Assembly: GCF_000400465.1 (NCBI RefSeq)
Contig: NW_008806280.1
Span: 210,001-242,000 of the forward strand
DNA from: Wallemia ichthyophaga EXF-994
Lineage: Eukaryota; Fungi; Basidiomycota
DNA length: 32,000 bases
Direction: 5' to 3'
Shown: positions 3 to 26,482 of the stretch, piece by piece
Numbering within the stretch: the first letter of the stretch is position 1
Layout of the letters: every line of letters starts with the position of its first letter
Program-made: the position numbers and the translations under genes
The notes under the pieces: generated by a model
The model's input: the letters and a program-made list of their open reading frames with translations, nothing else
Told to the model about the DNA's origin: nothing
Databases searched by the model: none

Positions 3-1814
3 AATAAGAGACCTGGTGCTTTTGCCATCTACCTTGAGCCATGGCACCCTGACGTCTTTGAGTTCTTGGATTTGCGTAAAAACCACGGTAAGGAAGAAGT
101 CAGAGCCCGTGATTTATTCTATGCTTTATGGATACCAGACTTGTTCATGCAACGTGTTCAAGAGAACGGTGACTGGCCTTTGTTCTGCCCACACGAAGCA
201 CCTGGCTTACATGAGGTTTGGGGTAAAGAATTTGAGCAACTCTTCTTCAAGTACGAGAGAGAAGGTAGATCAAAGAAGGTGGTCAAAGCACAAAAGCTTT
301 GGTACTCTATTCTCGACTCACAAGTCGAGACTGGTGGTCCATTCATGTTATACAAAGATCACGCAAATGCCAAGTCTAACCAACAAAACCTTGGTACAAT
401 CAAGAACTCAAACTTGTGCACAGAGATTATTGAATACTCTGCGCCTGACGAAGTTGCCGTGTGTAACCTCGCTTCGATCGCTTTACCATCATACATCAAA
501 GATCGCAGGTTCGACTTTAAGGAATTGCATAAGGTTACAAAAGTACTTACTCGCAACCTCAACCGTATCATTGATGTGAATTACTATCCAGTAAAGGAGG
601 CTCGTAACTCTAACATGCGCCATCGTCCAATTGGTTTGGGTGTTCAAGGTCTTGCGGATGCATTCCAACTGTTAAGATTTCCTTTCAGCTCAGAAGAAGC
701 AAGGTTACTCAACAAGCAAATATTTGAAACCATCTACCACGCTGCCGTTGAATCATCCACAGAACTTGCTACCGAATTCGGTCCATATGAGACTTATCAA
801 GGCAGTCCAGCTAGCAAGGGACAGTTGCAATATGATTTATGGAATGTTCAACCCACTAATTTATGGGACTGGAATGATTTGAAGCAGAAGGTGGCTCGTT
901 GTGGTTTGAGAAATTCACTTTTAGTCGCACCAATGCCAACAGCTTCAACATCACAAATATTAGGATTCAATGAGTGCTTTGAACCTTATACATCAAATAT
1001 TTACACAAGAAGAGTTTTATCTGGAGAATTCCAGATAGTAAACCCATGGCTGTTGAAGGACTTGTGTGAGTTGGGATTATGGAATGATGGTATGAAGAAC
1101 AAGATTATTGCGCACGGTGGATCAATTCAGAATATCTCAGAAATTCCATATGAGATCAAGGAACTGTACAAGACGGTTTGGGAAATAAGTCAGAAGGTTG
1201 TCATAGATTTGGCTGCTGATAGAGGGGCGTTCATTGATCAAAGTCAGAGTTTGAATGTTCATTTGGCGTCACCAACCCATGCACAGCTAACATCTATGCA
1301 TTTCTATGCTCACAAGAGAGGATTGAAGACTGGTATGTACTACTTGCGCACACGTCCACAATCAGCAGCTATTCAATTCACTGTCGACAAGGAAGCATTA
1401 GATGAGGCGAAGAGTGCACAAAGTGGCAAGTCAACACCAACAAGTGCACCAACACCACCCAATATACTCAATGGAGTTGAAAGAATGAAGTTGGAGGATA
1501 AGAATAGTAGCACGCGCTCGAATGCAGCGAGAAATGTTTCAACGCCAGTAAGAGCAGCCACCATTTCAAGAGCAGTGAGTGGAATTGAGAATACGTCATC
1601 AATCAAGCGCACGCTGTCTTCTCACATTGACATTGAGAATGATGAGAACAACCAACCAAGAGGAGAAGAAATAGTGGCTGGTGAAGAAACGGAAGATGAA
1701 GATGAAATTGATTTTGAGACAGCCAAAGCGAGAATGGAAGCTAAGCAACTCGAGCAAGAGAAGCTTATTTGTAGCATTGAGAACAAGGAAGCGTGTGTGA
1801 TGTGTAGCGGATGA
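3..1814 (+). CDS. RNR1: Ribonucleoside-diphosphate reductase large subunit (class Ia), 5' truncated by the window edge
   Basis: Frame is open from base 3 ([32 protein letters not shown]). Contains NSNLCTEI (catalytic Asn/Cys/Glu), [27 protein letters not shown] (Tyr-Tyr radical relay) and C-terminal CVMCSG (CxxC). Confidence 0.98.
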
Positions 1815-1918
1815 AATTATATATTTTAACGAACTTGAATGTTAATATTTATATTTTACATTTTGTGTCTAGTATTTCCAATACGCCGGTTTAAACGTTG
1901 ATCTGTTTCAACCAAACA

Positions 1919-3064
1919 ATGCAATCGCCGCAATGGAAAATTCATGAGTGAGTTAAATTTACGGCTTTGGATGGTGATTTGATAGTACATTTGTATTTCC
2001 AGCGCCTTGGTTCAAGCCTCCTCGTCACAGCTAACGTAATACAGTTCAACATTGGCTGGCGGTGCAGCGGGCGTGGTGGCAAGCGTGCTTACATGTCCAT
2101 TAGACGTAATAAAAACTAGACTACAAGCTCAAAAGAAGTCCAAAGGACACACGCTGGATGGTGTAATTGGTTGGTTCACCAATTTTGTCGTCGGATTGCG
2201 GTATTTGGCGCTAACATTACGATTTATAGATACGGTAAAGAAAATATCTCATGAACAAGGATACAAAGGTTATTACAAAGGATTGGGTCCGACGATACTT
2301 GGCTATCTTCCAACTTGGGCCATTTACTTTACAGTTTATGACGAGGTCAAGGCTATTCTTTCAAGCAAGCGAGGTGTGTAGACTTTTATATGCTACAATG
2401 CTATTTCTTACTTAGGAATCAAGGTGACCCCGATGGAGTAGATTGGTCAACTCATATGATTGCATCTGCTAGTGCGGGCGCTACAGGCGCAACTCTCACC
2501 AACCCATTGTGGGTGGTAAAAACAAGATTCATGGTGAGATTCTTTGGTTATTTGCGGATTCATTGCTTATTCCTTGCCTAGACTCAGGAGAAGGGAACGA
2601 TACCATATAGACATACTTTACACGCTTTGGAATCCATTTATAAGAATGAAGGGATGAAAGGTTTCTATAAAGGATTGATACCGTCACTGGTCGGAGTGAC
2701 GCACGTAGTAATTCAATTCCCGGTGTACGAAAGACTCAAGTTGAAAATGAAGAAGGCTGATAATGGTGAATTATCTACTATTTCACTTCTCGCCTGCTCT
2801 TCAATATCCAAAATGATGGCATCAGTTTCGACTTATCCACACGAAGTAGTCAGGACGCGACTCCAGGTGGAGAGGAGGTATCACCACGGACTTAATAATA
2901 GAAAGATACTTACAGTCATTAATGACATTTTATCGGAATCAGGATTTAAAGGTTTGTACAAAGGACTATCGGTGACGTTACTTCGAACGGTCCCAAATAG
3001 TGCGATGACATTGTTAGCGTACGAAATGATTATGTCAGAGTTAAGCAAATCAAGGCGAAAGTAA
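1919..3064 (+). CDS. YIA6: Mitochondrial carrier family (SLC25) protein, NAD+ transporter-like, spliced
   Basis: ATG 1919 (MQSPQWKIH). Introns 1948-2044, 2170-2229, ~2374-2423 (boundaries uncertain) and 2536-2582 join the ORF-track pieces. Three carrier signatures: PLDVIKTRLQ, PLWVVKTRFM, PHEVVRTRLQ. LGYLPTWAIYFTVYD resembles Ndt1/Yia6. Family is secure, substrate less so. Confidence 0.85.
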
Positions 3065-3165
3065 TTTATACCACTTGTATTCTAATCTGTTAAATTTTAT
3101 CTGGCACATGACATAGCCCTGTGCCTAAGGATGCGGTGCACCAAACATTTTATTAACCGACAGCG

Positions 3166-3682
3166 ATGAACTTACTCAAAACACTTAGTGTAATTGGATT
3201 GATCGTAGCAGCTAGCGCTGCTCCAGCCGGCTCAGTGAGTATTGCTCGATAAAATGCGGATTGGCCACTGACATGATACAACCCAGTCAGCACAGAATGA
3301 ACATGCAGCTACCGTAGATAAGGTTAGTGGGCACCTATCAAGTGAGGTAGAGCTAAGGCTTATAAAACAATCCTCGCAGAGAGACTTTGGAGACTTTATT
3401 CAAGGCGCTGAAGATACTGGCGAAGATATAAAGGATTTCTTCACCGGAGAAAAGCGTGATTGGATGGATAAAACTTCAGACTTTTTCGACAATATTGGAG
3501 ACGCCTTCACCGGCGATGACGATAAGCAAAAGCGCGATTGGGTTGAGGACGCTTCAAATTTCTTCGATAACATTGGAGACGCCTTCACCGGCGATGACGA
3601 CAAGCAAAAGCGCGATTGGATCGACGATATCGGACAATTCAGTGAGAACGTCAAGGATATGTTCGATGGTGATGATAAGTAG
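3166..3682 (+). CDS. Secreted Kex2-processed repeat protein (KEP-like peptide precursor), 135 aa, 3 exons
   Basis: Exons 3166-3234 (MNLLKTLSVIGLIVAASAAPAGS, signal-peptide-like), 3287-3322 and 3380-3682. Introns GTGAGT..CAG (3235-3286) and GTTAGT..CAG (3323-3379) keep the frame. Four KR sites each precede DF/DW-starting acidic units. Confidence 0.85.
3452..3619 (+). repeat. Coding tandem repeat, 78-bp (26-codon) period, inside the KEP-like gene
   Basis: AAGCG(T/C)GATTGG recurs at 3452, 3530 and 3608. The 48-nt block ATTGGAGACGCCTTCACCGGCGATGACGA(T/C)AAGCAAAAGCGCGATTGG at 3494-3541 and 3572-3619 differs at one base. Confidence 0.95.
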
Positions 3683-3798: not shown

Positions 3799-5736
3799 AT
3801 GGAAAATACTGTGACAAGCCATTTCAATGTCGATAAGGAGGAATATATTAGACTTGTACTACAATCACTCAAAGACCTTGATTTATCGTGAGCACAGAAT
3901 TCCTCCTATTCTGCTATCACTGACGACCTCATTAGCAGCAGCTTCAATTGCCTATCACAAGAATCCGGCGTGGAGTTGGAATCTGATACCGTCACTCAAT
4001 TACGCTCTTCTATTTTACAAGGCAATTGGTCCACTGCCGTTCATTTAATCGATAAACTCAATGTGGACCACTATGAAGCACTGAATTCAAAGATTATTCT
4101 TAATAAGCAGCATTATCTTGAATCTTTGGAATGCGGCGATGATAAATCCGCTATTAATATCCTCCGACATTCTTTGGTTCCACTAATTCAGTCTGATCCA
4201 TGTCAAGTTCAGTTATTGTCGAGGTTGGTTTGGCTGTTTGATTTGAGCGCCATTTAACTTAGATTCTCAGTTGGCTCATGTGTAGCTCACCCGCAGAATT
4301 ACGTCAAAGAGCCCATTGGGATGGTTCAAATATGACATCACGATCAAAGCTACTCGATAGCTTACAATCTTACATAAAACCTTCAATTATGCTACCACAA
4401 AGCAGACTTTTCAATCTACTCAACCAAGCAAAGCTTTATCAATCACGTAATAACCGTTATAGCAGCATACATGACGAAAATCTAAACTTCTCTCTCTTAA
4501 ATGATTACCATCAGGACAACTCAACGTTCCCAAATTTCAACTCTCTCACTGTCAAAGCACACTTTGATGAAATCTGGCATTGTTGCTTTAGTCACAACGG
4601 TAATTATCTTGCAACGTCATCTCGTGATAAATCTGTTGTCATTTGGGAGGTTGATGTTGTTCGGCAGATCTTCAGAAAGTCTTTGACTATCTTAAATCAT
4701 GACGAAGATATAAGTGCTATCTCTTGGTCTAATGATGATACTATACTCCTCACTGCTGCGGAGGAGACTATATACATTCATCATACTGTAACTGGCAATA
4801 GTATCAACAGCTATCAAGGCGCTCATGAGCATGATGAGACTATCTCAAGCCTATTGTGGGTAAACGATGACTCTAAATTCTACTCAACCGGGCTTGATCA
4901 GAAGGTTATTGAATGGAGTCACAACGGCGCAGTGCTGCACAAGTGGAATGACCTACCCATACGCATAATGGACGCTGCTCTTACACCAGATCAGACAAAG
5001 CTTGTAGTCGCTGGTCCTGACGGTCCTCAGCCGACTGTTGGACAAGATGGCACGTTAAGTTACAATGAGGAGATGCGTCATCTAATGGTGTATGACACTG
5101 AATCAAGAACTTGTTTGTGGTAAGAATGTCTTGGTCTTTTGCTTCATGTCTTGCTTACTTTGATATATTAGGCAAGTCGAGATGAAGAATGAAATATCGT
5201 CTCTCAAAGTATCTTCTGACTCCACCAAAGTAATTGTCAACTACGCGCCTGATGAGATACAAATATGGAGTCTGACAGACCAATGTCTGCTCAAGAAGCT
5301 CTTCGGCCACAAGCAATCTAAACATGTAATTAAGTCGTCTTTTGGAGGGTTGGACGAGGGCTTTGTTTTGAGCGGTAGCGAGGGTTAGAAAGCTGCATTT
5401 GAACTGTCTTTTACTGACTCTATTTCAGATGCTGCCATCTATGTATGGCATCTTCAATCAGGAGAACTCATGGAGATACTCAAAGGACACGAGAAAGGTT
5501 GCGTAAACTCAGTAGCGTGGTCACCGACAATGCCGTTGATATGTTCTGTCGGCGATGATCGCACAATACGTATGTGGTCAACAAGGACATCTTCCAGCAA
5601 GCATACAGAGCTCAACCTGCTAGAAAACGAAGGCGATGAGGGCTCCATGCATGGTATCGAAGGTGGCGTGGAAGTTGACGATGAGGAGGTAGACGAAGCT
5701 ATCGATGAGGTCGATTATCACATAGCTGATCAGTAG
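3799..5736 (+). CDS. GID7: LisH-CTLH-WD40 protein, WDR26/Gid7 subunit of the GID/CTLH E3 ligase, spliced
   Basis: ATG 3799 (MENTVTSHFNVDKEEYIRLVLQSLKDLDL, LisH-like). The intron ending at 3935 rejoins SSFNCLSQESGVELES. Then CTLH (LRSSILQGNW), LPQSRLFNLLNQA, and WD repeats (HFDEIWHCCFSHNGNYLATSSRDKSVVIW; GHEKGCVNSVAWSP). Confidence 0.9.
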
Positions 5737-5939
5737 CAACTATCATCAGTTTGATTATATCCATAAATTACTTATATGCATTTGGTTTGTTGATAAATTA
5801 GATGGCCTTGTGTTCGTTACTCGTAACTTTGAGAATAAAGTCTGCTTTCAATAGTTACCCTTACTCAGTCATAAAAGTACCAAAAATTCAAAGCGATGAT
5901 AAAACTCTGTCAAAGCATTGTTAAATTTCTGAGAGCTTG

Positions 5940-8390
5940 AATATTACTTAACAGCTGTATCCCTTGGATCCTTAAATACTGGATCTGAGACTCATCTCTG
6001 TATATGATAGGGTGATTTGAATGTTAATTTAATACTATCTAAAGCGTTTTGAAGAAATCTATTGAGCTAAATACGCTCAAGGCACCTTGCAAATGACCAA
6101 GTAAGTGAGAAGTCGAATGCAAATAGGATTACTATGAACGATGTCACGCGCTTCATATATAAATAAACAAATATGTCTAGCTGATGAAGACAAGTAGCAC
6201 CCAATCAGCTCAGAATTTCGGCTGTATAAACGTGATTTACGTTCTCCGACAATTAGCGTCCACAGGATTTCATGCTGGCTCCAAGGAGACTTTATTTTTA
6301 TGACCAGTAGTGCATTTCGAAATTTCAAACAATAGGGTTTGACAGGTATTATAGACTGGATTGGAATCTTAGATGTTATGATTTTAGGAACAAATATTTT
6401 TAGATCTTAAATCACACTCACTGCATTATGTCAAATTTAGCTGGACGAGTGTAGAGCAAATTACTTAAGTTATTCATGATAAGGGCATTTGAATTCTTCT
6501 CACACAGGTACTCTGCACATAATGATATCTAAATCTCCCCACTTTGTACTACCGATGATGCTGTAAAAAATACGTCATTGAGCATGGTATTTTCGACTGT
6601 GAGAGGGGAAGCATGGTAAAAAATAATCCTGAGTGTATTAGAGCTACATTTAAGCTATCTAAGAATCTAATAGCACTCTTCAGCCTTCAAACGACGGTAT
6701 GTCCACGAAAGGAAGACGTGATATTGACGCGCTTAACTATAAGTTCAGCGTTGTAATTTGAAGGCGTACTTTTCTTTCGCTTATCAGTCACCAAAAATGC
6801 TGTCAATAATTCCAAACTCCACCTGTTCTTCCCTCCCTAACTGCCTCAATACCCGTATCTGCTGGTACCACTCCTCAGTAGTCATCGCAACTCAATAAGC
6901 TGAAACAATAATTCCTCAATAATACACTAGGAAAGCTCGCTGTCTTGTTGTATGCAAGATACGCTAGGAATTCAAGTTGCGTGATCCTCTTGTTTAGGCA
7001 GCGCAAGAATATACGTCGTCCAAATTTCAGAGACTAATGATGTCAACTCATCAAACGATACCAAGAGAACATACGATATATATCTTATTCTCTTTCCTTC
7101 TGTCAAAGTGTCATATCGCTGACTTTTCTCGTCAACGCTTTCGGTTGTGTGGTCGGATAGTCACTGGTCGCCGGACATTCATTCTGAATCGATAGTGAGT
7201 CATCGTCGGAAAACTTCATGTTCACTTTATTCCATCTGCTCATTCGCTGTACAAACCGTTCCTCAACCCAGCAGTCGAAAACTTAAAAGAATTGCAGTCT
7301 TGTTAATTACGAGATGCCACGAGCCACGCTAATTTTTAACTGTATCTTAACATCATAACTAATATAATTATAATATCTGACATTGCTTAAGTCACTAGTC
7401 TGAATCTGTTAGGTGACAAACCCAATATTAATCCCAAGCCCTTTTTATCGTCACGCTCTCTCTTCGCCGTCTCGTAAACGTCTTTTACCTTCTCCTCGTA
7501 GCCTTATCGGATAAACCTCCAGGACAGATTTCAAGCAGAACACTTTAAAGGTCACGCTATTTTTATATTACATTCTAATTAATTATTATAATGGATGTTA
7601 AATTTACTGTACAAGTCATTTCTCAAGTACAACTCTGAACCTTAACAGTGCCTTAACAAACTTTGTGATGGAATTAAATTGCTAAGATGAGTTATCGATG
7701 TGAAACAAAAACTTTTATAGAAAAGGGGTAATGGTTGCAATGGCCGGAGTCGTCAAAATCCACGTCATGGCTGTATCTTAATTAACAGAATTACCGAACC
7801 CTGCACGCTTCGAAAAAGAAGAATAAAATTGCTTAAAACGATATGCATTATCAAAATACAAAGATAATTATGCAAATATCAGAATGTAATTGGATCCGCT
7901 AGTCCAAATAATTGCGTAAGGTTAAGACAAATTGAACACAGTCCCAAAAAGGTATCCATTTGTCATTGAGTTTTCTAAGATATCTCTGATTAATACGCAC
8001 TCACTATTTATAATAGCAATTTGGTCACGATTCATAAAAACACTGGCACTGAGGAAAGGATAAGATTGAGGAGAAAAGAAAAGTGAACCAAACAGACAGC
8101 CGTTCAGCCATTTGTATGTTAAAAGTCCAGAAATCATGACATAATATTCTAAATCGCAATATCCTTGAAAAACGATAATGTACATGCTCTAGCTACGATG
8201 AAGAGTAAATAGACGTAAAAAGTAAGCCTGATAATTATTTCTGGGCATTTCCATTGCTGGAAAGCAGGTAACGTCTATGTGTTTATCGAAATCGCATTTA
8301 ACCTCCATTTGACATATGAAATGTTCACATTGATTTGATTCAAAATCATAGAGATCCGTGGGTCTGACAATTTATTCGGTTCACTTGAAT
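5940..8390. repeat. Left arm of long inverted repeat (~2.45 kb)
   Basis: Line-by-line comparison shows position x pairs with 18479-x over the whole arm with no indels. Mismatches seen at 5946, 5955, 7277, 7298, 7317 and 8388. The ORF-track pairs 6077/12402, 7147/11332 and 7922/10557 all sum to 18479. Confidence 0.98.
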
Positions 8391-10088
8391 GCTCAATTTT
8401 TATGTTTAAAGCTTCCATTATAATTCAACTTGTGCACTTCAAAAATTGCTTAAATATTCAGTCGAATTGTGGAACAAGCCATGAATGAATAAATTTTACA
8501 CATTAATTCCCAAAAAGGTTGTGAAATTCGATGAGTGACAGATAATTCTGGACATCTGTTTATCGAGAAAAACTGGATCAATCAATTTAAAAATTAAATC
8601 ACCACCCAGTTGAATTAACCGTTACAATATAGAGACATGGCGATCAGTCTTGAGTGATATACAAAGCCTAAATTAGCTTTGAAGAAGTCATATATTTAGA
8701 CAATTTTTGAAGTCAATTTCCAAGACTGCAAAGTTGAAGATTTGTTGATCTAGTACAAAATAGATGTTCTGCAAGAAGCTTCTTTTTCTTGTCAAAGATC
8801 ATTCTAACTGTATGAGCGTGATTAATAATTATGCTTATTGTCAATCTTAGTTAGTACTTTAAACCCGGAAAATTGTCAGTTTGAAGTGACCGTATCTTGA
8901 TTAGATCCGTGTCAGAAGCTCGATTTCGACAAAATAACTTCGAAATCTAACTTGCGCCAAATCATGATAAAAAAAACACATCAATCAATGGCAGATAAAT
9001 TTTTTTAGTCCATATAGATTTCCCTACACATTATATATCACTATAAAACAAAATAGCGCTAGCTTTATTAACCTAAAGTTTTCGATGGCTTATTATATAT
9101 ATTATACAACGATTTACTCTTACAAGTGTCAGTTTTGTGAAGTTTTTTTAAAGTTAGATCAATACTCGTTAGAATAATATTTTAATCGAACATGTTTTAG
9201 TTAGCTTAAGCGTAAGGAGAAGTAACTTCAAGAATAGACACATCAGTAAATGATGACAGCCGATAAAATGAACGAAGCTTGAAAAACTTCAACGTGATAC
9301 TGTTTCATAAGATGGAGAGAATGTGCCGATTAATACCCTATTGGTTTTTCTAACATTTTTTATTGTTACGTTTTTGATCTAATTAATAATATATATCTTT
9401 TAATGGTCGGGTGCAAAATAATCTCTTAAATGAAAGGTCTCCACCTCTATCAATTCATGGCTTCGTCTCAAATTCCATGTTTTATTATCTATGAATATTT
9501 TTCGGAATAAATGCAGTCATTGTTACCTGCATTCTTTAATCTAAATCAATTATTCAGGAAGTTGGAACATCTGTAGTTCTAACATCCGTAAATAAACCCA
9601 TAGTCGTGGCTAGTTTGTGGATGGCATAAAATCTTCGACTAATCCGAAGTACTTAAAAAGCGAAATTGGAAAAAATTTAACATTCACACACAATTTGCTA
9701 AAATGCTAATCATTTTGTCAAATATACTCATTTTGTCCATCCGTTTTATGCAATTATTTGAAGCATGTCCATGTTAAAAATAGTGAGCTGTTGATCGTAA
9801 GTCGATGTTTGGTTATAATCTAGGATGACCTTTTTATAAAACGATGAATGGGCTACAACAAAATAGTATTCTTTTTTAGTTCACAAGTACTACATTGACT
9901 TTCGTAAACATTAGCCTTTGACTTTTTATAACAATTTTTAGCTTCATGATCTTCATAGTGCGCTTTTATTTTCAAATAACATTGTGTTGACATGAACTTG
10001 AGTTAATAATTTCCCCGTGACTCAATCCCTCAGATCTCTTGTTGTGAGATTACACTGTTTCGCTGAGTTTAAAACACATAACATTTTA
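8391..10088. other. Unique AT-rich non-coding spacer (central core) between the inverted arms, 1698 bp
   Basis: No ORF in the track in any frame. Hand count over 8401-10080 gives 523 G+C in 1680 nt (~31% GC). Many short A/T runs. Not self-complementary. Confidence 0.92.
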
Positions 10089-12539
10089 ATCCAAGTGAAC
10101 CGAATAAATTGTCAGACCCACGGATCTCTATGATTTTGAATCAAATCAATGTGAACATTTCATATGTCAAATGGAGGTTAAATGCGATTTCGATAAACAC
10201 ATAGACGTTACCTGCTTTCCAGCAATGGAAATGCCCAGAAATAATTATCAGGCTTACTTTTTACGTCTATTTACTCTTCATCGTAGCTAGAGCATGTACA
10301 TTATCGTTTTTCAAGGATATTGCGATTTAGAATATTATGTCATGATTTCTGGACTTTTAACATACAAATGGCTGAACGGCTGTCTGTTTGGTTCACTTTT
10401 CTTTTCTCCTCAATCTTATCCTTTCCTCAGTGCCAGTGTTTTTATGAATCGTGACCAAATTGCTATTATAAATAGTGAGTGCGTATTAATCAGAGATATC
10501 TTAGAAAACTCAATGACAAATGGATACCTTTTTGGGACTGTGTTCAATTTGTCTTAACCTTACGCAATTATTTGGACTAGCGGATCCAATTACATTCTGA
10601 TATTTGCATAATTATCTTTGTATTTTGATAATGCATATCGTTTTAAGCAATTTTATTCTTCTTTTTCGAAGCGTGCAGGGTTCGGTAATTCTGTTAATTA
10701 AGATACAGCCATGACGTGGATTTTGACGACTCCGGCCATTGCAACCATTACCCCTTTTCTATAAAAGTTTTTGTTTCACATCGATAACTCATCTTAGCAA
10801 TTTAATTCCATCACAAAGTTTGTTAAGGCACTGTTAAGGTTCAGAGTTGTACTTGAGAAATGACTTGTACAGTAAATTTAACATCCATTATAATAATTAA
10901 TTAGAATGTAATATAAAAATAGCGTGACCTTTAAAGTGTTCTGCTTGAAATCTGTCCTGGAGGTTTATCCGATAAGGCTACGAGGAGAAGGTAAAAGACG
11001 TTTACGAGACGGCGAAGAGAGAGCGTGACGATAAAAAGGGCTTGGGATTAATATTGGGTTTGTCACCTAACAGATTCAGACTAGTGACTTAAGCAATGTC
11101 AGATATTATAATTATATTAGTTATGATGTTAAGATACAGTTAAAAATTAGCGTGGCTCGTGACATCTCGTAATTAACAAGTCTGCAATTCTTTTAAGTTT
11201 TAGACTGCTGGGTTGAGGAACGGTTTGTACAGCGAATGAGCAGATGGAATAAAGTGAACATGAAGTTTTCCGACGATGACTCACTATCGATTCAGAATGA
11301 ATGTCCGGCGACCAGTGACTATCCGACCACACAACCGAAAGCGTTGACGAGAAAAGTCAGCGATATGACACTTTGACAGAAGGAAAGAGAATAAGATATA
11401 TATCGTATGTTCTCTTGGTATCGTTTGATGAGTTGACATCATTAGTCTCTGAAATTTGGACGACGTATATTCTTGCGCTGCCTAAACAAGAGGATCACGC
11501 AACTTGAATTCCTAGCGTATCTTGCATACAACAAGACAGCGAGCTTTCCTAGTGTATTATTGAGGAATTATTGTTTCAGCTTATTGAGTTGCGATGACTA
11601 CTGAGGAGTGGTACCAGCAGATACGGGTATTGAGGCAGTTAGGGAGGGAAGAACAGGTGGAGTTTGGAATTATTGACAGCATTTTTGGTGACTGATAAGC
11701 GAAAGAAAAGTACGCCTTCAAATTACAACGCTGAACTTATAGTTAAGCGCGTCAATATCACGTCTTCCTTTCGTGGACATACCGTCGTTTGAAGGCTGAA
11801 GAGTGCTATTAGATTCTTAGATAGCTTAAATGTAGCTCTAATACACTCAGGATTATTTTTTACCATGCTTCCCCTCTCACAGTCGAAAATACCATGCTCA
11901 ATGACGTATTTTTTACAGCATCATCGGTAGTACAAAGTGGGGAGATTTAGATATCATTATGTGCAGAGTACCTGTGTGAGAAGAATTCAAATGCCCTTAT
12001 CATGAATAACTTAAGTAATTTGCTCTACACTCGTCCAGCTAAATTTGACATAATGCAGTGAGTGTGATTTAAGATCTAAAAATATTTGTTCCTAAAATCA
12101 TAACATCTAAGATTCCAATCCAGTCTATAATACCTGTCAAACCCTATTGTTTGAAATTTCGAAATGCACTACTGGTCATAAAAATAAAGTCTCCTTGGAG
12201 CCAGCATGAAATCCTGTGGACGCTAATTGTCGGAGAACGTAAATCACGTTTATACAGCCGAAATTCTGAGCTGATTGGGTGCTACTTGTCTTCATCAGCT
12301 AGACATATTTGTTTATTTATATATGAAGCGCGTGACATCGTTCATAGTAATCCTATTTGCATTCGACTTCTCACTTACTTGGTCATTTGCAAGGTGCCTT
12401 GAGCGTATTTAGCTCAATAGATTTCTTCAAAACGCTTTAGATAGTATTAAATTAACATTCAAATCACCCTATCATATACAGAGATGAGTCTCAGATCCAG
12501 TATTTAAGGATCCAAGGGATACAACTGTTAAGCAATATT
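10089..12539. repeat. Right arm of long inverted repeat (~2.45 kb)
   Basis: Reverse complement of 5940-8390, with mismatches at 12533, 12524, 11202, 11181, 11162 and 10091. Confidence 0.98.
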
Positions 12540-12713
12540 GAAACCCTTAGAAGTAATCAATTCGTGCATTTTTCTTCTGTATGCATTACTTGCATTAGTG
12601 AATGTGTGACTCAACCAGGAACGAGAAAGCGAAGGAATGATATATATTACATCAATCCGGTATATACCATTAAGAGACTACATCTATTATAATGTGCAAA
12701 GTATAAAATACAG

Positions 12714-15537
12714 TTAACTTTCAATCAGACCGAGTCTCTCCTTCGATCTCTTGCTAGCGCGATATAGCTCATGAAGAGCTTTCCTAACTCCATTAAAGTC
12801 ACAAGCCTCTATACAGCTGTTGTAAACATTTAGTAAACGCTAGTAGCCTATAAAAATCTAACTCACGACGTATACTTGTCAATGAAAAAGCTCTGATCCG
12901 CCATACCCACATTGACCAGCTTGGATTGCTGAATAATAGCAGGTATGACGTTTTTCATCAGCGCAGCATCGAACTCTGAAAGCTGTCTTAGGAGAGTGAT
13001 AACCGTACTGGTGCAGTCTTCCGGGAAGGTGTTGAGTAAACCTTGTAATAGTACTTTTGTTAAATTGGCGATATTAGTATGATTCGAGAGGGTGTTCTTG
13101 ATTGTATTTTTGTCCACTTCAACGTTGTCACCACTAGTTAAGTATCCAACTAATGATCTTATGAAATCCAATGAGATCAAGATTGTGTCAACACTAAACA
13201 ACGTTAATGCAGTGAGGGATAATTCGAAAATAGGCTGAATCACGCTTCCATTGATAACGAGTGCAGGTCTGAGATCAATGATCTGTAGTAATAAATGCAA
13301 ATAATCTTCAACTAAGTCAGGTATTTTGGTTGCATCAGTTGATTGTAAAATTGAGAATAATTTATTAGATATTTTGTTGAACGATTGACTTATAAGCTGT
13401 TTATCGTTAGCAGCATAGTTAAAAGCCTTGGTCAGCAACCAAATATACACTGATAGAGGATTTAAGTCGAATGAATTGGTCAGTAATTCAATTAACTTTG
13501 GTATAACTGTAACGACAGCCTGCTCATCGAAGAATCTTAATCCCTTTCTAAACAATCCACAGACTCTTTCGATCAAAGTCGCTGATGACCTATTATGATG
13601 GACAATAATACTTGCGAATACGTCATACAACTCATAAAAAGTCACCTGGCATTGGATTGGTAAGGGTGCGATTGGACCTGTGAAGGCAATGTAGCATTCA
13701 ATTTGCTCTATATTGATAATCAAGATCTTGATATCATCATGAGATAAAGTGCTCTTCGTGATAACCCCCTTGACATTATTCAAGTATGGTTGAGTGAACT
13801 TCTGTATGAGAGCCAACTGATCGTTCTTATCGCTGATGGACTCAATGACCAAAGAGATGGATTCGGAGATAGATCTGTGATCATCTTCTTGTAAACCAGA
13901 CTGAATTAGTTGATTGTTGAACTCCAATAGTTGAGGTAAATAAGGTATCAATTGCTTGTTGCAGTCTTCGCATAAGAACTTTAAAGCTTGCGAAGAAGCA
14001 GCAGGGATGTCAACATCCTTACAACTGAGATCGAAACCTGTTGTGATAAACGACATATAGAATGGAATGTGGTCAGGCTTTAAATTGATCCACTCAGTAA
14101 ACCTAGAAGCAACCAATATACCTGCATACTTGATTCTAGGATGTTGAGGAAGGTTTGGCAGCAAATTGAAGATGTTCTCTAAAATTTCATTGTCGCTCTG
14201 GTAATCGACTTTGGAGCCCATAGACCTAATTGAAAAGAGAGGCGCTTCAACTGATTGCCATTCATTTGAATTAATTGCAGTAAGAATCAAGGAATACGAC
14301 CTAGACAAGCAGTAGCTTGATCCTATCACAGTGCAACAATCTTTTAAGGTGTCACCAATGTAATGCCTAAATGATCTGAAGTCATCATACTCTTGAGCAG
14401 TGATAGTGGATTCATCGAGAGGAAATTTTAAATGATTGATGAAAATGTCAAGCAAAGACGAGTAGATTGGTACGAAATGCGGCTTTAAATCACTCTTTAT
14501 GTCCAGAGAATGAGCCAGCTTGTACCAGAAGTTGAAGGTGATCTGGGCTATGTCTAAATCGTGATAGGATGATGATGAAATAATGGCTTGAATGACATGG
14601 CTGAATGACGAAGGTGATGATAACATGAGCGGCAAGTAAGTTTCACCGACTTGGCAGTACAGTCTGGTGAAAAGTCTAACAGCGTCGTTATCTTCTTGGT
14701 CAATGTTGAGTGGCTTTGATAACTCTAATAAGATGACAGTGATTAGCTCGTTATTATCTTGTAGCTCTTGAGACTCATTGATAAGGACTATAAGAGTTTC
14801 AATACCAGACTCGACCAAACTTTCGTCTTGAAGTGAGTTTAAAAGGGAGGACAAAATGTTGGAATTAAGCAAAGAAGATGGAAAAATTTCGCCAGAGACT
14901 AGCCAAGATTTCAAGCAATTAAAGACTAAAGCATTGTCTGTGTTGCTATTGGCAATATACGAGTCCAAAAGCTGTAAGACTTTATTGGAGTTGTTGGTAA
15001 GGAGAGTGGATGAACGGTGAGAGAGCTGGTCGTAAGAAAGCTGAATTCTTTGATTATTGACTTCTTCAGGTAAAATGGTCAAAAAGTCAAGTAGAATGTC
15101 ATTATTTGCCGAGTAGAAGGACTCAACGTAATCAGTCACGGGATCTGACCAATCAAAGTACTGAATGGCCAAATCAGCTAACGATAAATTCAAATAAGTC
15201 TTCAAAACGCGTGGATGATTAGATTTAACTAAAGAGGAAAGCAAAGTGTCTTTAAGTGAGGATAGTGATTGATATGGCAACTGGTCGAAATCGTAGATAA
15301 TTTTTGATCTAAACGTCTGCACTGCGAATAGTTTTAATTCCAAAGGTAAATTATCCTCGACTAAGAGGTCGTTGGATATTTGCCATGCATCTTGCTACGC
15401 GAGTGGTTAGAAACGCAGGCCAAGCACGTGTAACTCACAGTCTGTTGAAACGATTGCAGATATTCATTGGCTAGTGATTTTTTGCTGTTATCTGCATCAT
15501 AGTATAAAATATTCAACGCCTCTATAACTTGAGCCAT
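12714..15537 (-). CDS. MTR10: Transportin-SR / Mtr10 importin-beta family nuclear import receptor, spliced
   Basis: ATG 15537 (MAQVIEALNILYYDADNSKKSLANEYLQSFQQT), intron, then QDAWQISNDLL..ELKLFAVQTFRSKIIYD, DFLTILPEE, TFNFWYKL, FRSFRHYIGDTLKDCC, WQSVEAPLFSIRSMG. Final intron 12817-12866 leads to a last exon ending in TAA at 12714. Confidence 0.93.
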
Positions 15538-15558
15538 CACAAACGAGAAACAAGAATA
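15538..15558. promoter_or_regulatory. 21-bp gap between divergent MTR10 and COA1 start codons
   Basis: The CAT of MTR10 ends at 15537 and the ATG of COA1 begins at 15559. Promoter elements cannot fit here and must overlap the coding regions. Confidence 0.6.
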
Positions 15559-16059
15559 ATGTCAAATATCAAGTTAGACGATATTCAATTTAAAAGATTT
15601 AACAAGCCATTGCCACCGAGATCTTCTCCTTTTAAATCTTTATCCTTACTTCTTGGCCTTTCTCTTTCATCGTGGGCCGTCTTCCTCACTTATTCAAACA
15701 ACGCCGAGAGGCTTTCTTCTTCCGTGGTGAAAGAGCTCATTAGGCAGAGCAAATTTCATCCTCTCACCAGAGATGTACTCGGTGCACCGATAAGACCCGC
15801 TTCAGATAACTGGTTTCTGTTGGGTGGTCTCTTAGGATCAACTTGGGTTAACGGCTCAGTTTCAATGATGCAAGGCAAGGTAGATATTAGTTTGAGGCTT
15901 AAAGGGTCTTTAGATTCAGGTACCGTGTACTTTACTTCAATTAGGAACTCAAATAAAGACAAGTTCAACATTCTGAGATACAAGTTGATCGACGATAACG
16001 GTACTCATCATAATCTATTGAATCAATCATCGATACAAGACTTTGAAAGCATTGAATAG
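15559..16059 (+). CDS. COA1: Cytochrome c oxidase assembly factor Coa1-like mitochondrial inner-membrane protein
   Basis: First in-frame ATG is 15559 (the track starts at a TTG at 15529). One hydrophobic segment followed by NAERLSSSVV..LG..I..W..GSVSMMQGKVDISLRLKGSLDSGTVYFTSIR, the fungal Coa1 pattern. Confidence 0.75.
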   Translation: MSNIKLDDIQFKRFNKPLPPRSSPFKSLSLLLGLSLSSWAVFLTYSNNAERLSSSVVKELIRQSKFHPLTRDVLGAPIRPASDNWFLLGGLLGSTWVNGSVSMMQGKVDISLRLKGSLDSGTVYFTSIRNSNKDKFNILRYKLIDDNGTHHNLLNQSSIQDFESIE

Positions 16060-16063
16060 CTTT

Positions 16064-17378
16064 TTACTTGGCATTTACATACCCCAACTCATTCAATCCC
16101 TCTTTCACCACTTGTAACACTCTGTCCACATCTTGTCTCTTCTCATTCACTACACTTTCACCCATGTGTCCCACTCTCATGTATTGATCCTTGCAATCCT
16201 TATGCAATCCACCTGCAGCGACGACACCTCTCTTAACAATACACTTGAGTAAGTCTGCACCTTTTACACCGCTTGGATAGACAATAGTTGTCATTCCATT
16301 GGCTTGATATCCCTCATCACAGGCAAGCTGTTTCAATCCCCAGCTGTGGATAACTTTCTTGAAATTGTTTGAAACTTCCTTGTGCTTTCTGAAGCGATGT
16401 TCCAAGCTACAATGGCTATTCTCAACTATAGCCTTGAGTGTTGTGTTAAGTGCATATATCAGTTGTACTGGTGGTGTAGCAAAGTAGGCTGGTTGATTAC
16501 TCTCGTATGCTCTCATTACGGGCAGCCAGCGAGACCAGTTAGCATAGTAGCTTGATGCTGGTGATTTTCTAGATTGCTGTACTTTAATAGCTCTTTCAGA
16601 CGCCCAAACTAGCGATAAACCAGGTGGAGCACCGATTCCTTTCTGAGATGCGCTGACAATTACCTGTGCATTAACGTTAGAAGCAGGCCATATGTTAGCT
16701 TTCACCCACATCGATGCTCCAGTCATCGAATCTGATCAACTCCGATCCAACGCTACACACACCATCGAGTACAACTAAACAGTGAGGTTGCAATTGTTTG
16801 ACGACCTTTGCAACTGTTTCAATATCACTCAAAACACCAGTAGAAGTGTCTACGTGAGTTAAAGTGACTAACTTGTATTGCTTTTGCTTTAAAGTGTCTT
16901 GCAATTGATCAATCGAGACGGATCTACCGATTTGGCACTTTAGATGATCAACGTTGCCACCATAGACACTGAGGCAATTCCCAAACTCATCGCCAAAGTA
17001 GCCTGTGTTGATGACTAAGGCGTTATCGCCTGACTCTATAAGATTGCTGCCAACTTGATCCCAACCTAGTGTACCGCTGCCGGAGACGATAAATGGCTGG
17101 GCTGAGTCGCTGTAGACCAAGCTCCTGAGCATCTTGATACAGTGCCCAAACACAGGTATAAAGTTGGGTGACACGTGGGATACTGAGGGATGGGCATTTG
17201 CGTAAAGTACCTTAGATTATTAGGATTAGATTAATGTACTTGATGGGCTAGCAGAATAACAGCGCAACCCACTTCATCGGAAACTTCTATTGGTCCTCTA
17301 CATCAAGTCAGCCAACACAGGCAATGCACGTGTCACCTACGGTATAACCAGCAGCGAGTGGTCCTCTTGCTTAAACAT
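16064..17378 (-). CDS. AGX1: Alanine-glyoxylate / serine-pyruvate aminotransferase (class V PLP enzyme), spliced
   Basis: ATG 17378 (MFKQEDHSLLVIP|GPIEVSDEV). Motifs GSGTLGWD, THVDTSTGV, VLDGVCS, SASQKGIGAPPG (PLP lysine), YFATPPVQL, RVGHMG. Confidence 0.92.
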
Positions 17379-23694: not shown

Positions 23695-24013
23695 ATTCCT
23701 CACACCATCGATGTCCTCACGCCTAGTGAAAAGTTTCACCGAACGATTGAAGCATTGTGTATAATTAATAAATCTACCATTCCAGCACTCGCCGCTGTAC
23801 ATAAATTGTCCTATTTATCATTTTCCTTGTATGTCTGCTAGCAGCGCAACATAAACTTAAAGTTGTGCACATAAATTCATTCAAGTCGTGCGGTGGTGCT
23901 TAATTAGCACAATCATAAATACGCCTCTACATCGCGACGCGTCATCAGATATTTCAACCGTGATTGTGTTGTAAAGTAATAAGTTATGACAAAAAAATAC
24001 AAAATCAATCCTT

Positions 24014-26420: not shown

Positions 26421-26482
26421 CTTGGTGGTTAACACTCAACCATCATCTCCCACGCGTATACCCAATTCTCATTTATCAAAAT
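26421..26482. promoter_or_regulatory. 62-bp divergent intergenic region between IPI1 and the dynein C-terminal gene
   Basis: Head-to-head ATGs at 26420 (-) and 26483 (+). Confidence 0.55.

What the first reader, a model, noticed from the sequence alone, without database searches (positions are those of the whole stretch)
5940..12539. Near-perfect 2.45-kb inverted repeat around an AT-rich 1.7-kb core: candidate inverted-repeat centromere in a basidiomycete-like genome
Seen: two arms (5940-8390, 10089-12539) that are reverse complements with about 6 mismatches and no indels, enclosing a unique ORF-free core of ~31% GC. The block occupies a 7-kb gene desert (5737-12713), whereas other gaps in the window are 4-320 bp, and both neighbours (GID7, MTR10) end about 200 bp from the arms. 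Established: this arm-core-arm layout and scale is that of Komagataella phaffii and Candida tropicalis centromeres, and in miniature the S. pombe imr-cnt-imr domain. The basidiomycete centromeres I know are retroelement-rich regions (Cryptococcus, Ustilago) or short AT-rich troughs (Malassezia). Inference: this is a centromere of a type I do not recall being described in basidiomycetes, which would imply convergent evolution. It could not be confirmed from sequence alone.
Basis: partly seen in the sequence, partly recalled or inferred. Interest (0 to 1): 0.92.

Follow-up and report, generated by a model that had tools for sequence, protein, structure and literature searches.

The report
Candidate inverted-repeat centromere in Wallemia ichthyophaga
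A real, nearly perfect 2.45-kb inverted repeat around an AT-rich, gene-free 1.65-kb core in the compact genome of the halophilic basidiomycete Wallemia ichthyophaga has the size and layout of a Komagataella phaffii centromere and lies where chromosomes were rearranged, but nothing available here shows that it is a centromere.

Summary
Arms 5940-8390 and 10089-12539 differ at 6 positions with no indels. The core has 31% GC, and the gene-free gap is 6,977 nt against a median of 214 nt.

The window is W. ichthyophaga EXF-994, scaffold KE007230.1:210001-242000, a short-read assembly. The repeat is nevertheless real:
- Contigs from two other strains stop exactly k-1 = 119 nt inside the right arm.
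- An independent contig joins the arm to the core.

The block holds no ORF over 87 aa, no tRNA, no Rfam or Pfam relic, no tandem repeat and no target-site duplication. Strain-specific SNPs appear to be shared by both arms, which indicates ongoing gene conversion.

Comparison with W. hederae and a closer unnamed relative shows that GID7-IR-MTR10 is a derived arrangement at a reused rearrangement breakpoint:
- MTR10|ARPC2 was ancestral.
- A roughly 49-kb inversion ends at the left arm.
- A diverged copy (62-68% identity) of the outer 600 nt of the arm sits at the reciprocal FDH|ARPC2 junction.

The dimensions fall in or near the range of the four K. phaffii centromeres. Whether there is one such element per chromosome, and whether CENP-A binds it, could not be tested.

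Verdict: a credible centromere candidate (about 0.5). The main rival is a functionless inverted duplication left by break repair. I found no paper describing Wallemia centromeres. Interest 0.6.

The parts
5940..8390 (.). Left arm of the inverted repeat (detectable pairing extends to 5927-8413, with frayed edges)
   Evidence: 6 mismatches and 0 indels against the right arm; GC 36.9%. No ORF over 87 aa and no Pfam hit in six frames. An independent Logan contig, L007, covers 6059-8562 at 99.88%.
8414..10065 (.). Unique AT-rich core (the 'mid' region), 1,652 nt
   Evidence: GC 31.3%, the lowest in the window. Its two halves are not palindromic: alignment score 26 against a shuffle mean of 24.7. 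No ORF over 46 aa, no tRNA, no Rfam hit and no tandem repeat. No homolog in any locus fetched.
10089..12539 (.). Right arm of the inverted repeat (detectable pairing 10066-12552)
   Evidence: Contigs of strains GCA_004917865.1 and GCA_004918895.1 end inside it at 12414 and 12421. That is exactly 119 nt (k-1 for IDBA-Hybrid with maximum k = 120) past the last arm-specific base.
6004..6602 (+). Outer arm segment (mirror copy at 11877-12475 on the minus strand) homologous to the FDH-ARPC2 spacer on another scaffold
   Evidence: nhmmer E = 6e-15 and 8e-7; 62-68% identity; colinear with L011 8632-9609.
5737..5926 (.). Left flank between the GID7 stop and the arm. Synteny with the closest relative ends at 5708
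   Evidence: No similarity to the right flank and no target-site duplication.
12553..12713 (.). Right flank between the arm and the MTR10 stop. Synteny with the closest relative resumes at 12666
3799..5736 (+). GID7/WDR26 ortholog; its 3' end faces the repeat
   Evidence: Gene model in L010 with LisH_WDR26 and WD40 families; WD40 Pfam hits.
12714..15600 (-). MTR10 (transportin-3 family); its 3' end faces the repeat. The upper coordinate is approximate, because the NCBI model is fused to the neighbouring aminotransferase
   Evidence: Pfam Xpo1 and TPR_TNPO3_IPO13; 100% identity to E3P92_00427; gene table.

Best explanation
The block 5927-12552 is the best candidate in this region for a small regional centromere of the inverted-repeat type, as in Komagataella phaffii and Candida parapsilosis. 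Proposed mechanism: CENP-A nucleosomes occupy the unique AT-rich core and spread with falling density into the two arms. The arms are kept identical by frequent intrachromosomal gene conversion or crossover, and their potential to form a stem-loop or cruciform, or their transcription, helps mark the site. The convergent 3' ends of GID7 and MTR10 bound it. SHOWN: the IR-core-IR anatomy; the absence of coding, tRNA, known ncRNA, satellite or transposon content; the outlier gene desert and GC trough; presence of the repeat in at least three further datasets; a position on a lineage-specific, reused rearrangement breakpoint. SHOWN BY INFERENCE FROM CONTIG ENDS: concerted evolution of the arms. INFERRED ONLY: kinetochore assembly, CENP-A distribution, and one such element per chromosome. 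Likely history (inferred): a translocation separated MTR10 from ARPC2 and joined MTR10 to about 3.5 kb of AT-rich non-coding DNA. That DNA may descend from the AT-rich region that lies next to FDH in W. hederae. A 2.45-kb segment spanning that junction was then duplicated in inverted orientation around the core.
For: 1. Dimensions fall in or near the range of the four ChIP-proven K. phaffii centromeres and the 5.8-7.1-kb gene-free IR centromeres of C. parapsilosis.
2. The gap is 6,977 nt against a median of 214 nt (n = 29), and the core is the deepest GC trough in 74 kb examined.
3. W. ichthyophaga is reported with 1.67% repeats, listed as tandem repeats and DNA transposons only. The block has no RT, integrase or transposase relic. 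A retroelement-type centromere is therefore unlikely in this genome, and some compact type must exist.
4. The repeat is not a recent accident of one strain. Contigs of two other strains stop k-1 = 119 nt inside the arm. The shared 119 nt carry strain-specific SNPs (12428, 12471, 12485, 12486) at sites where the two reference arms are identical, which indicates concerted evolution. SNP density between strains is 1.4-4.5% in the arm against 0.17-0.28% in the neighbouring genes, so the sequence evolves fast while the structure is kept.
5. The orphan copy of the outer arm at FDH|ARPC2 has drifted to 62-68% identity, while the two arms remain 99.8% identical.
6. The interval is a breakpoint for at least two rearrangements. 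Centromeres are rearrangement hotspots in the C. parapsilosis clade and in Malassezia.
7. In W. hederae the former partner gene FDH abuts a gene-free region of 31% GC that ends its contig.
8. The block lies at 216-223 kb of a 540-kb scaffold, so it is not subtelomeric.
Against: - There is no direct evidence of centromere function and no genome-wide count. Only about 74 kb of the 9.6-Mb genome could be inspected.
- In the closest relative, contigs run straight through both MTR10|ARPC2 and GID7|GH31 with spacers of 1.6-1.8 kb and no repeat. The element is therefore not at a conserved position.
- Part of each arm is ordinary ex-spacer DNA, which an accidental duplication would also give.
- The GC trough (31% against a genome mean of 45%) is shallower than in Malassezia, whose cores are 78% AT.
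- A nearby dynein-Ipi1 inversion shows that the whole neighbourhood is rearranged, not only this point.
- The reference is a short-read assembly.
Confidence: 0.5

Rival explanations
1. A functionless inverted duplication left by double-strand-break repair (fold-back priming or template switching) at a rearrangement junction. Gene conversion then kept it homogeneous simply because the copies are long, close and identical.
For: The outer edge of the left arm coincides with the end of synteny on the GID7 side and with one end of the inferred 49-kb inversion. The outer part of the right arm may be continuous ancestral DNA next to MTR10 (one of two readings), and it has a third, diverged copy at the reciprocal FDH|ARPC2 junction. 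This fits a scenario in which the right arm is the original and the left arm the copy. The predicted ancestral MTR10-ARPC2 spacer is about 1.6 kb, matching the relative's 1.64-1.77 kb. The neighbourhood carries other lineage-specific rearrangements.
Against: It does not explain where the roughly 3.5 kb of unique AT-rich non-coding DNA (inner arms plus core) came from, in a genome whose median spacer is 214 nt. Long near-perfect IRs with short spacers are generally unstable in eukaryotes (my own knowledge), yet this one is present in every dataset examined and is kept by concerted evolution.
Confidence: 0.28
2. A foldback-type or other non-autonomous DNA transposon, or a member of a dispersed repeat family, with 2.45-kb terminal inverted repeats.
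For: The genome is reported to hold about 85 kb of DNA transposons. A third, diverged partial copy of the arm exists on another scaffold.
Against: There is no target-site duplication, and the arm ends fade rather than stopping sharply. No transposase or any other Pfam relic is present in six frames. The only other copy found lies exactly at the reciprocal rearrangement junction, not at a random site. There are no further copies in the other roughly 60 kb of W. ichthyophaga DNA fetched.
Confidence: 0.07
3. A different cis-acting element: an invertible (flip-flop) switch, a replication origin, or an unannotated non-coding RNA locus.
For: IR recombination would invert the core. Contig L007 joins left-type inner-edge alleles to right-type alleles at 7277/7298/7317, which fits an inversion or a conversion event. 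K. phaffii centromeres are early-replicating and their mid regions invert, so these roles need not exclude a centromere.
Against: The core has no ORF over 46 aa and no Rfam match, so a switch would have nothing obvious to switch. The W. ichthyophaga MAT locus is reported elsewhere, as a gene-containing inversion. L007 is a collapsed short-read contig, so its allele pattern is ambiguous.
Confidence: 0.06
4. An assembly artefact of the short-read reference (repeat misplacement or gap-filling by SOAPdenovo).
For: The libraries had 500-bp and 2-kb inserts and K was 21, so a 2.45-kb arm was never spanned. The GID7-to-arm and core-right-to-arm junctions were seen only in the reference.
Against: Two other strain assemblies, which were guided by the EXF-994 reference, branch exactly k-1 nt inside the right arm. 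An unrelated Logan assembly joins the arm to the left end of the core. The window contains no N. With a single-copy core whose two ends both lead into the same sequence, IR-core-IR is the only linear solution.
Confidence: 0.04

Closest known systems
Komagataella phaffii centromeres CEN1-4 (Coughlan et al. 2016, PMC5010909)
   Same: Two near-identical IRs (2.0-2.7 kb, 0-1 differences) flank a unique mid region of 0.9-1.3 kb, for a total of 5.4-6.7 kb. They are gene-free, lie in a compact genome, have no transposon or satellite content, and show IR recombination in nature. Here the values are 2.45 kb (6 differences), 1.65 kb and 6.6 kb, with evidence of gene conversion between the arms.
   Different: The host is a basidiomycete (Wallemiomycetes), not a member of the Saccharomycotina. 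The mid region is slightly longer. CENP-A binding, the transcription coldspot, early replication and the one-per-chromosome rule are proven in K. phaffii and untested here.
Candida parapsilosis / C. tropicalis IR centromeres (PMC7263194; Chatterjee et al. 2016 as cited there)
   Same: Gene-free regions of 5.8-7.1 kb with IRs around a unique mid region. Centromeres there are hotspots of genome rearrangement between species.
   Different: C. parapsilosis IRs are shorter or fragmented, 85-97% identical, and conserved between chromosomes. Here the arms are 99.8% identical, and the only related sequence found elsewhere is a decayed partial copy.
Schizosaccharomyces pombe cnt flanked by imr repeats
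   Same: A unique central core between inverted repeats.
   Different: The window has no tRNA genes and no outer otr/dg-dh repeats, and the element is roughly 5-15 times smaller (sizes from my own knowledge).
Malassezia short regional centromeres (PMC7025860)
   Same: A basidiomycete with a genome under 10 Mb; a 3-5-kb kinetochore region on a GC trough; no transposons; centromeres coincide with synteny breakpoints.
   Different: Malassezia centromeres were shown to lack direct or inverted repeats. Their core is under 1 kb, 78% AT, and enriched in a 12-bp motif. Here the trough is milder (69% AT) and the defining feature is the IR.
Cryptococcus / Ustilago large regional, retroelement-rich centromeres
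   Same: Basidiomycete hosts; gene-poor regions.
   Different: No retroelement relic is present, and the block is 6.6 kb rather than tens of kb.

Membership tests
IR-type small regional centromere (K. phaffii / Candida type) | Near-identical inverted repeats of about 0.4-4 kb flanking a unique mid region of about 1-3 kb | tested here: met
   2,451-nt arms with 6 mismatches and a 1,652-nt core. The core is not itself palindromic.
IR-type small regional centromere (K. phaffii / Candida type) | Lies in an exceptionally large gene-free interval of a compact genome | tested here: met
   6,977 nt against a median of 214 nt (n = 29 gaps in 74 kb). No ORF over 87 aa. No gene model in three annotations.
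IR-type small regional centromere (K. phaffii / Candida type) | Exactly one such element per chromosome | not testable with these tools
   No fungal genome collection can be scanned, and only four W. ichthyophaga loci could be fetched.
IR-type small regional centromere (K. phaffii / Candida type) | CENP-A/Cse4 enrichment centred on the mid region | not testable with these tools
   Needs an experiment. CENP-A is conserved across basidiomycetes (PMC7794384).
IR-type small regional centromere (K. phaffii / Candida type) | Transcription coldspot | not testable with these tools
   RNA-seq data exist (PMC3849046), but reads cannot be mapped here.
IR-type small regional centromere (K. phaffii / Candida type) | Recombination between the IRs (mid-orientation polymorphism or arm homogenisation) | tested here: inconclusive
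   Homogenisation is supported: strain-specific SNPs fall within the shared k-1 overlap, and the arm-edge alleles vary among strains. Inversion of the core cannot be read from short-read contigs.
IR-type small regional centromere (K. phaffii / Candida type) | Coincides with breakpoints of synteny between related species | tested here: met
   MTR10|ARPC2 is ancestral. GID7|GH31 is the arrangement in the relative. The reciprocal junctions were located.
Malassezia-type AT-rich short regional centromere | GC minimum of the region, with no repeat structure | tested here: not met
   A GC minimum is present, but the element is defined by a long IR, which Malassezia centromeres lack.
Retroelement-rich regional centromere (Cryptococcus / Ustilago) | Clusters of LTR or non-LTR retrotransposon relics | tested here: not met
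   The six-frame Pfam scan of arm plus core finds nothing. The genome paper reports no retrotransposon category.
S. pombe-type centromere | tRNA gene clusters and outer heterochromatic repeats flanking imr-cnt-imr | tested here: not met
   No tRNA in the 32 kb. There is no other repeat in the window apart from a 78-nt tandem duplication.
Foldback / long-TIR DNA transposon | Sharp termini, a target-site duplication, and multiple dispersed copies | tested here: not met
   The ends are frayed and there is no TSD. Copy number across the whole genome could not be measured; the only other copy found is partial and lies at the reciprocal junction.

The most novel reading that the evidence does not exclude
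Wallemia ichthyophaga, an early-diverging lineage of the Agaricomycotina, uses K. phaffii-like inverted-repeat centromeres. This would be the first IR centromere reported in the Basidiomycota. It would have arisen convergently and recently, assembled after a translocation from an ordinary intergenic spacer plus AT-rich DNA. Its congener W. hederae carries an 8-bp satellite at the possibly corresponding position, which would mean rapid turnover of centromere architecture within one genus.
Probability: 0.4. Interest if true: 0.8.

Novelty: new member of a known kind. Interest (0 to 1): 0.6.

Why it matters
IR centromeres are so far documented only in ascomycete yeasts (Komagataella, the Candida clade, Schizosaccharomyces). 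They underlie the argument that centromeres can be specified structurally, by IRs or cruciforms, rather than purely epigenetically (PMC7263194). An independent origin in a basidiomycete would be a strong case of convergence. Wallemiales is also inferred to have diverged before most CCAN kinetochore proteins were lost in the Agaricomycotina (PMC7794384). This example would additionally show how an IR centromere is built, because here the arms can be traced partly to a former gene spacer and the event can be placed on a species tree. If the block is not a centromere, it is still a rare, stably maintained long palindrome-like structure at a reused breakpoint, of interest for genome-stability work. 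Either way the test is cheap: one long-read or Hi-C assembly of a 9.6-Mb genome.

Tried and rejected
Nothing was found.
- Mitochondrial insert or RNA genes: no tRNA, no Rfam family, no Pfam hit.
- Satellite content: none.
- Transposon ends: no target-site duplication, frayed edges.
- A larger degenerate palindrome: the outer flanks and the two core halves show no similarity above shuffles.
- An orthologous repeat in relatives: the closest relative (L003, L008), W. hederae (L009) and W. mellicola (L004-6) have no long IR at the MTR10 or GID7 flanks, and their spacers do not align to the block.
- Exact look-ups of window ORFs to reach more strain contigs: two failed and one succeeded.
- Metagenome scans for the conserved arm block and for FDH loci of other Wallemia species: no match and no close relative, respectively.
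- Literature: no paper on Wallemia centromeres or on Wallemia inverted repeats of this kind. One broad search was uninformative.
- The third protein search used too strict an E-value cut-off and returned only the relative's GID7.
- MAT-type flip-flop locus: rejected, because the core has no genes and the MAT inversion is described elsewhere.


Full report
OBSERVATION. The window contains a single long inverted repeat. Its arms are 5927-8413 and 10066-12552 (2,487 nt, 99% complementary), separated by 1,652 nt. The remaining 14 mismatches lie in the frayed outer (5927-5939) and inner (8391-8413) edges. GC is 31.3% in the core, 36.9% in the arms and 42.2% in the rest of the window. The outer flanks are unrelated to each other, and the two halves of the core are not palindromic.

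WHAT THE BLOCK DOES NOT CONTAIN. The longest ORF between the GID7 stop (5736) and the MTR10 stop (12714) is 87 aa. No tRNA gene is present, no Rfam family matches at gathering score, and there is no tandem repeat. No Pfam domain appears in any of the six frames of arm plus core; the only line is a noise hit at E = 0.17. tblastx against every fetched locus finds nothing. There is no target-site duplication, and the arm ends fade rather than stop sharply. The block is therefore not a gene pair, a retroelement cluster, a mitochondrial insert, a satellite or a typical TIR transposon.

ORGANISM AND ASSEMBLY. The flanking genes carry introns and are closest to Wallemia ichthyophaga. Coatomer epsilon is 94% identical to E3P92_00429, and the large MTR10 exon is 100% identical to E3P92_00427. 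Through the cluster members I reached the reference protein of strain EXF-994. Its locus, L010, is identical to window 2714-27378, so the window is GCA_000400465.1 scaffold KE007230.1:210001-242000. The IR block lies at 215,927-222,552 of 539,633 bp. That assembly was built from Illumina libraries with 500-bp and 2-kb inserts, using SOAPdenovo at K=21 (PMC3849046). Three things follow: no read pair spanned a 2.45-kb arm, the orientation of the core is arbitrary, and the assignment of the six variants to the left or right arm is uncertain.

IS THE REPEAT REAL? Yes. Contigs of two other strains (GCA_004917865.1 and GCA_004918895.1) end at window 12414 and 12421, inside the right arm. In each strain that is exactly 119 nt beyond the last base that distinguishes the right arm from the left: 12533 in the first strain and 12540 in the second. 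Those genomes were assembled with IDBA-Hybrid at a maximum k of 120 (PMC6738226), so 119 = k-1, which is the signature of a graph branch into a repeat. An unrelated Logan contig (ERR15373361, L007, 2,504 nt) matches window 6059-8562 at 99.88%, which is arm plus 149 nt of core. With a single-copy core whose two ends both lead into the same sequence, IR-core-IR is the only linear solution. I put the artefact reading at about 4%.

THE ARMS EVOLVE IN CONCERT. The shared terminal 119 nt of the strain contigs carry strain-specific substitutions: 12471 in one strain, and 12428, 12471, 12485 and 12486 in the other. At these positions the two reference arms are identical. The position where the arms start to differ also shifts between strains, involving 12524 and 12533. 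L007 combines left-type inner-edge alleles with right-type alleles at 7277/7298/7317. That fits either conversion or an inversion of the core, but it is ambiguous in a collapsed contig. SNP density between strains in the outer arm is 1.4-4.5%, against 0.17-0.28% in the 14.7 kb of genes next to it. The sequence is therefore free to change while the two copies are kept alike.

SETTING. Across 29 annotated intergenic gaps in the W. ichthyophaga loci fetched, the median is 214 nt. This gap is 6,977 nt, and the next largest are 2,016 and 680 nt. The core holds the lowest 1-kb GC windows in 74 kb (30.2%); outside the block the minimum is 34.6%. The genome paper reports 9.6 Mb, 73.6% coding, 45.35% GC and 1.67% repeats, listed as tandem repeats and DNA transposons only. 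GID7 (LisH_WDR26 + WD40) and MTR10 both point their 3' ends at the block.

COMPARATIVE GENOMICS. Four results bear on the history of the locus.
- In an unnamed close relative (Logan SRR25399871, about 80% DNA identity), synteny with the window runs from 23806 down to 12666 and then stops. MTR10 is followed after about 1.7 kb by ARPC2 (L003).
- W. hederae also has MTR10 followed by ARPC2, 631 nt apart (L009). MTR10|ARPC2 is therefore ancestral, and GID7-IR-MTR10 is derived in W. ichthyophaga.
- In the relative, GID7 is followed after 1.6 kb by a convergent GH31 gene, and synteny with the window ends at 5708 (L008). In W. ichthyophaga, GH31-MFS lie on the same scaffold at about 161.7-166.4 kb, and GH31 now faces a kinase (L014). 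Un-inverting KE007230.1 from about 166.4 to 215.8 kb restores the relative's GID7>|<GH31 arrangement. A 49-kb inversion therefore has one end at the outer edge of the left arm. Its polarity, meaning the lineage in which it occurred, is not resolved.
- ARPC2 in W. ichthyophaga sits on another scaffold, preceded by formate dehydrogenase (FDH) with a 2,016-nt spacer (L011).

The interval that now holds the IR has thus been used by at least two rearrangements.

A THIRD, DECAYED COPY OF THE ARM. The outer part of each arm (window 6004-6602, mirrored at 12475-11877) is homologous to the FDH-ARPC2 spacer (L011 8632-9609). The match is colinear, 62-68% identical, with nhmmer E = 6e-15 and 8e-7. Nothing else in the arms or the core has a homolog in any fetched locus. 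Because of the IR symmetry, two readings fit.
(a) The segment is the ancestral MTR10-ARPC2 spacer, duplicated at the translocation. The lengths add up to about 1.6 kb, matching the relative's spacer. The right arm would then be the original sequence, and the left arm a later inverted copy of a 2.45-kb stretch spanning the translocation junction.
(b) FDH once flanked an existing IR where GID7 does now, and a break inside that arm left a stump next to FDH.

On either reading the orphan copy has drifted by about 35% while the two arms differ by 0.24%. In W. hederae, FDH is the last gene on its contig. Starting 117 nt after the FDH stop, an 8-bp satellite (TGCATAAA)n of at least 1,834 nt (GC 31% against 49% for the rest of the locus) runs to the contig end. 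The motif is absent from the window. FDH therefore borders a special AT-rich non-coding region in the sister species. This is compatible with the W. ichthyophaga block descending from that region, but it does not prove it.

INTERPRETATION. The anatomy matches ChIP-proven IR centromeres closely:
- K. phaffii has IRs of 2,012-2,699 bp with 0-1 differences, mid regions of 883-1,330 bp and totals of 5,354-6,655 bp. The centromeres are unrelated in sequence between chromosomes, and the mid orientation is polymorphic.
- C. parapsilosis has gene-free IR regions of 5.8-7.1 kb, and its centromeres are rearrangement hotspots.

In K. phaffii only seven sequences longer than 1 kb occur in multiple identical copies, and four of them are the centromeric IRs. 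Long perfect IRs are thus rare in at least one compact yeast genome. In W. ichthyophaga a retroelement-type centromere is unlikely. The Malassezia type has no IR. I therefore rate 'IR-type small regional centromere' as the single most likely explanation, at about 0.5.

What is shown is structure, population persistence, concerted evolution and breakpoint position. What is inferred is kinetochore assembly and one element per chromosome.

The main rival, at about 0.28, is an inverted duplication produced by break repair during the rearrangements and then passively homogenised. It explains the coincidence of the arm edge with a breakpoint and the ex-spacer content of the arms. It does not explain the origin or retention of about 3.5 kb of unique AT-rich non-coding DNA in this very compact genome. 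The remaining rivals are a foldback-type transposon (0.07), another cis-element (0.06) and an artefact (0.04).

NOVELTY. Searches found no description of Wallemia centromeres or of IR centromeres in basidiomycetes. A 2026 atlas that includes 32 basidiomycetes reports mainly transposon-cluster centromeres in fungi. The Malassezia study calls its IR-free centromeres the first short regional centromeres in basidiomycetes. CENP-A is conserved across basidiomycetes, and Wallemiales is inferred to have diverged before the CCAN loss in the Agaricomycotina, so a ChIP test is feasible in principle. If confirmed, this would be a new member of the IR-centromere kind in a new phylum, with a traceable origin.

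LIMITS. Only four W. ichthyophaga loci (about 74 kb) could be fetched. The protein-search and contig look-up caps are exhausted. No fungal genome collection, read data, RNA-seq mapping or Hi-C was available. The two metagenome scans gave nothing useful.

Noticed in passing
L016 11859-13692 (W. hederae GCA_004918325.1, contig SPNW01000014.1, last 1.8 kb): An 8-bp satellite (TGCATAAA)n of at least 1,834 nt, with 86% matches and GC 31% against 49% for the rest of the locus. It begins 117 nt after the formate dehydrogenase stop and runs to the contig end. It does not resemble the TTAGGG-type telomere repeats I know from basidiomycetes, and it may be a centromeric or pericentromeric array.
   Followed up: partly
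L011 7985-10000 (W. ichthyophaga FDH-ARPC2 spacer, GCA_004918315.1 SPNX01000032.1): The second-largest gene-free gap seen (2,016 nt). It carries a copy of the outer arm segment at 62-68% identity and marks the reciprocal junction of the MTR10|ARPC2 break.
   Followed up: yes
window ~23,700-32,000; L003 1-1624; L004 1-2320: The dynein heavy chain plus Ipi1 segment is inverted in W. ichthyophaga compared with the close relative and W. mellicola, where the dynein 3' end abuts the ubiquitin-like gene. The relative has a small IR (about 340-nt arms, 84-89% complementary, roughly 590-nt centre) at that junction, and window 23708-23802 also matches it in the inverted orientation.
   Followed up: partly
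window 3450-3605: A tandem duplication of a 78-nt unit (two copies, 83% identical) in the 3' part of the gene model upstream of GID7.
   Followed up: no
window 12714-17378 and 16-3682 (gene models in L001 and L010): The public gene models here are chimeric. The 1,301-aa 'alanine-glyoxylate transaminase' fuses an Aminotran_5 gene with MTR10, although in the relative L003 an opposite-strand Coa1 ORF is called between them. A 1,242-aa model fuses RNR1 with a mitochondrial carrier.
   Followed up: no
window 12414-12552 compared with L001 and L002: SNP density between strains in the outer right arm is 1.4-4.5%, about ten times that of the adjacent 14.7 kb of genes (0.17-0.28%).
   Followed up: yes
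L004 12857-15941 (W. mellicola, downstream of MTR10): A 3.1-kb stretch with no gene model and no ORF over 88 aa follows MTR10 in three W. mellicola strains. It is followed by two gene models with no Pfam hit (one has a Cys-rich ORF). It has no IR and no marked GC trough.
   Followed up: partly
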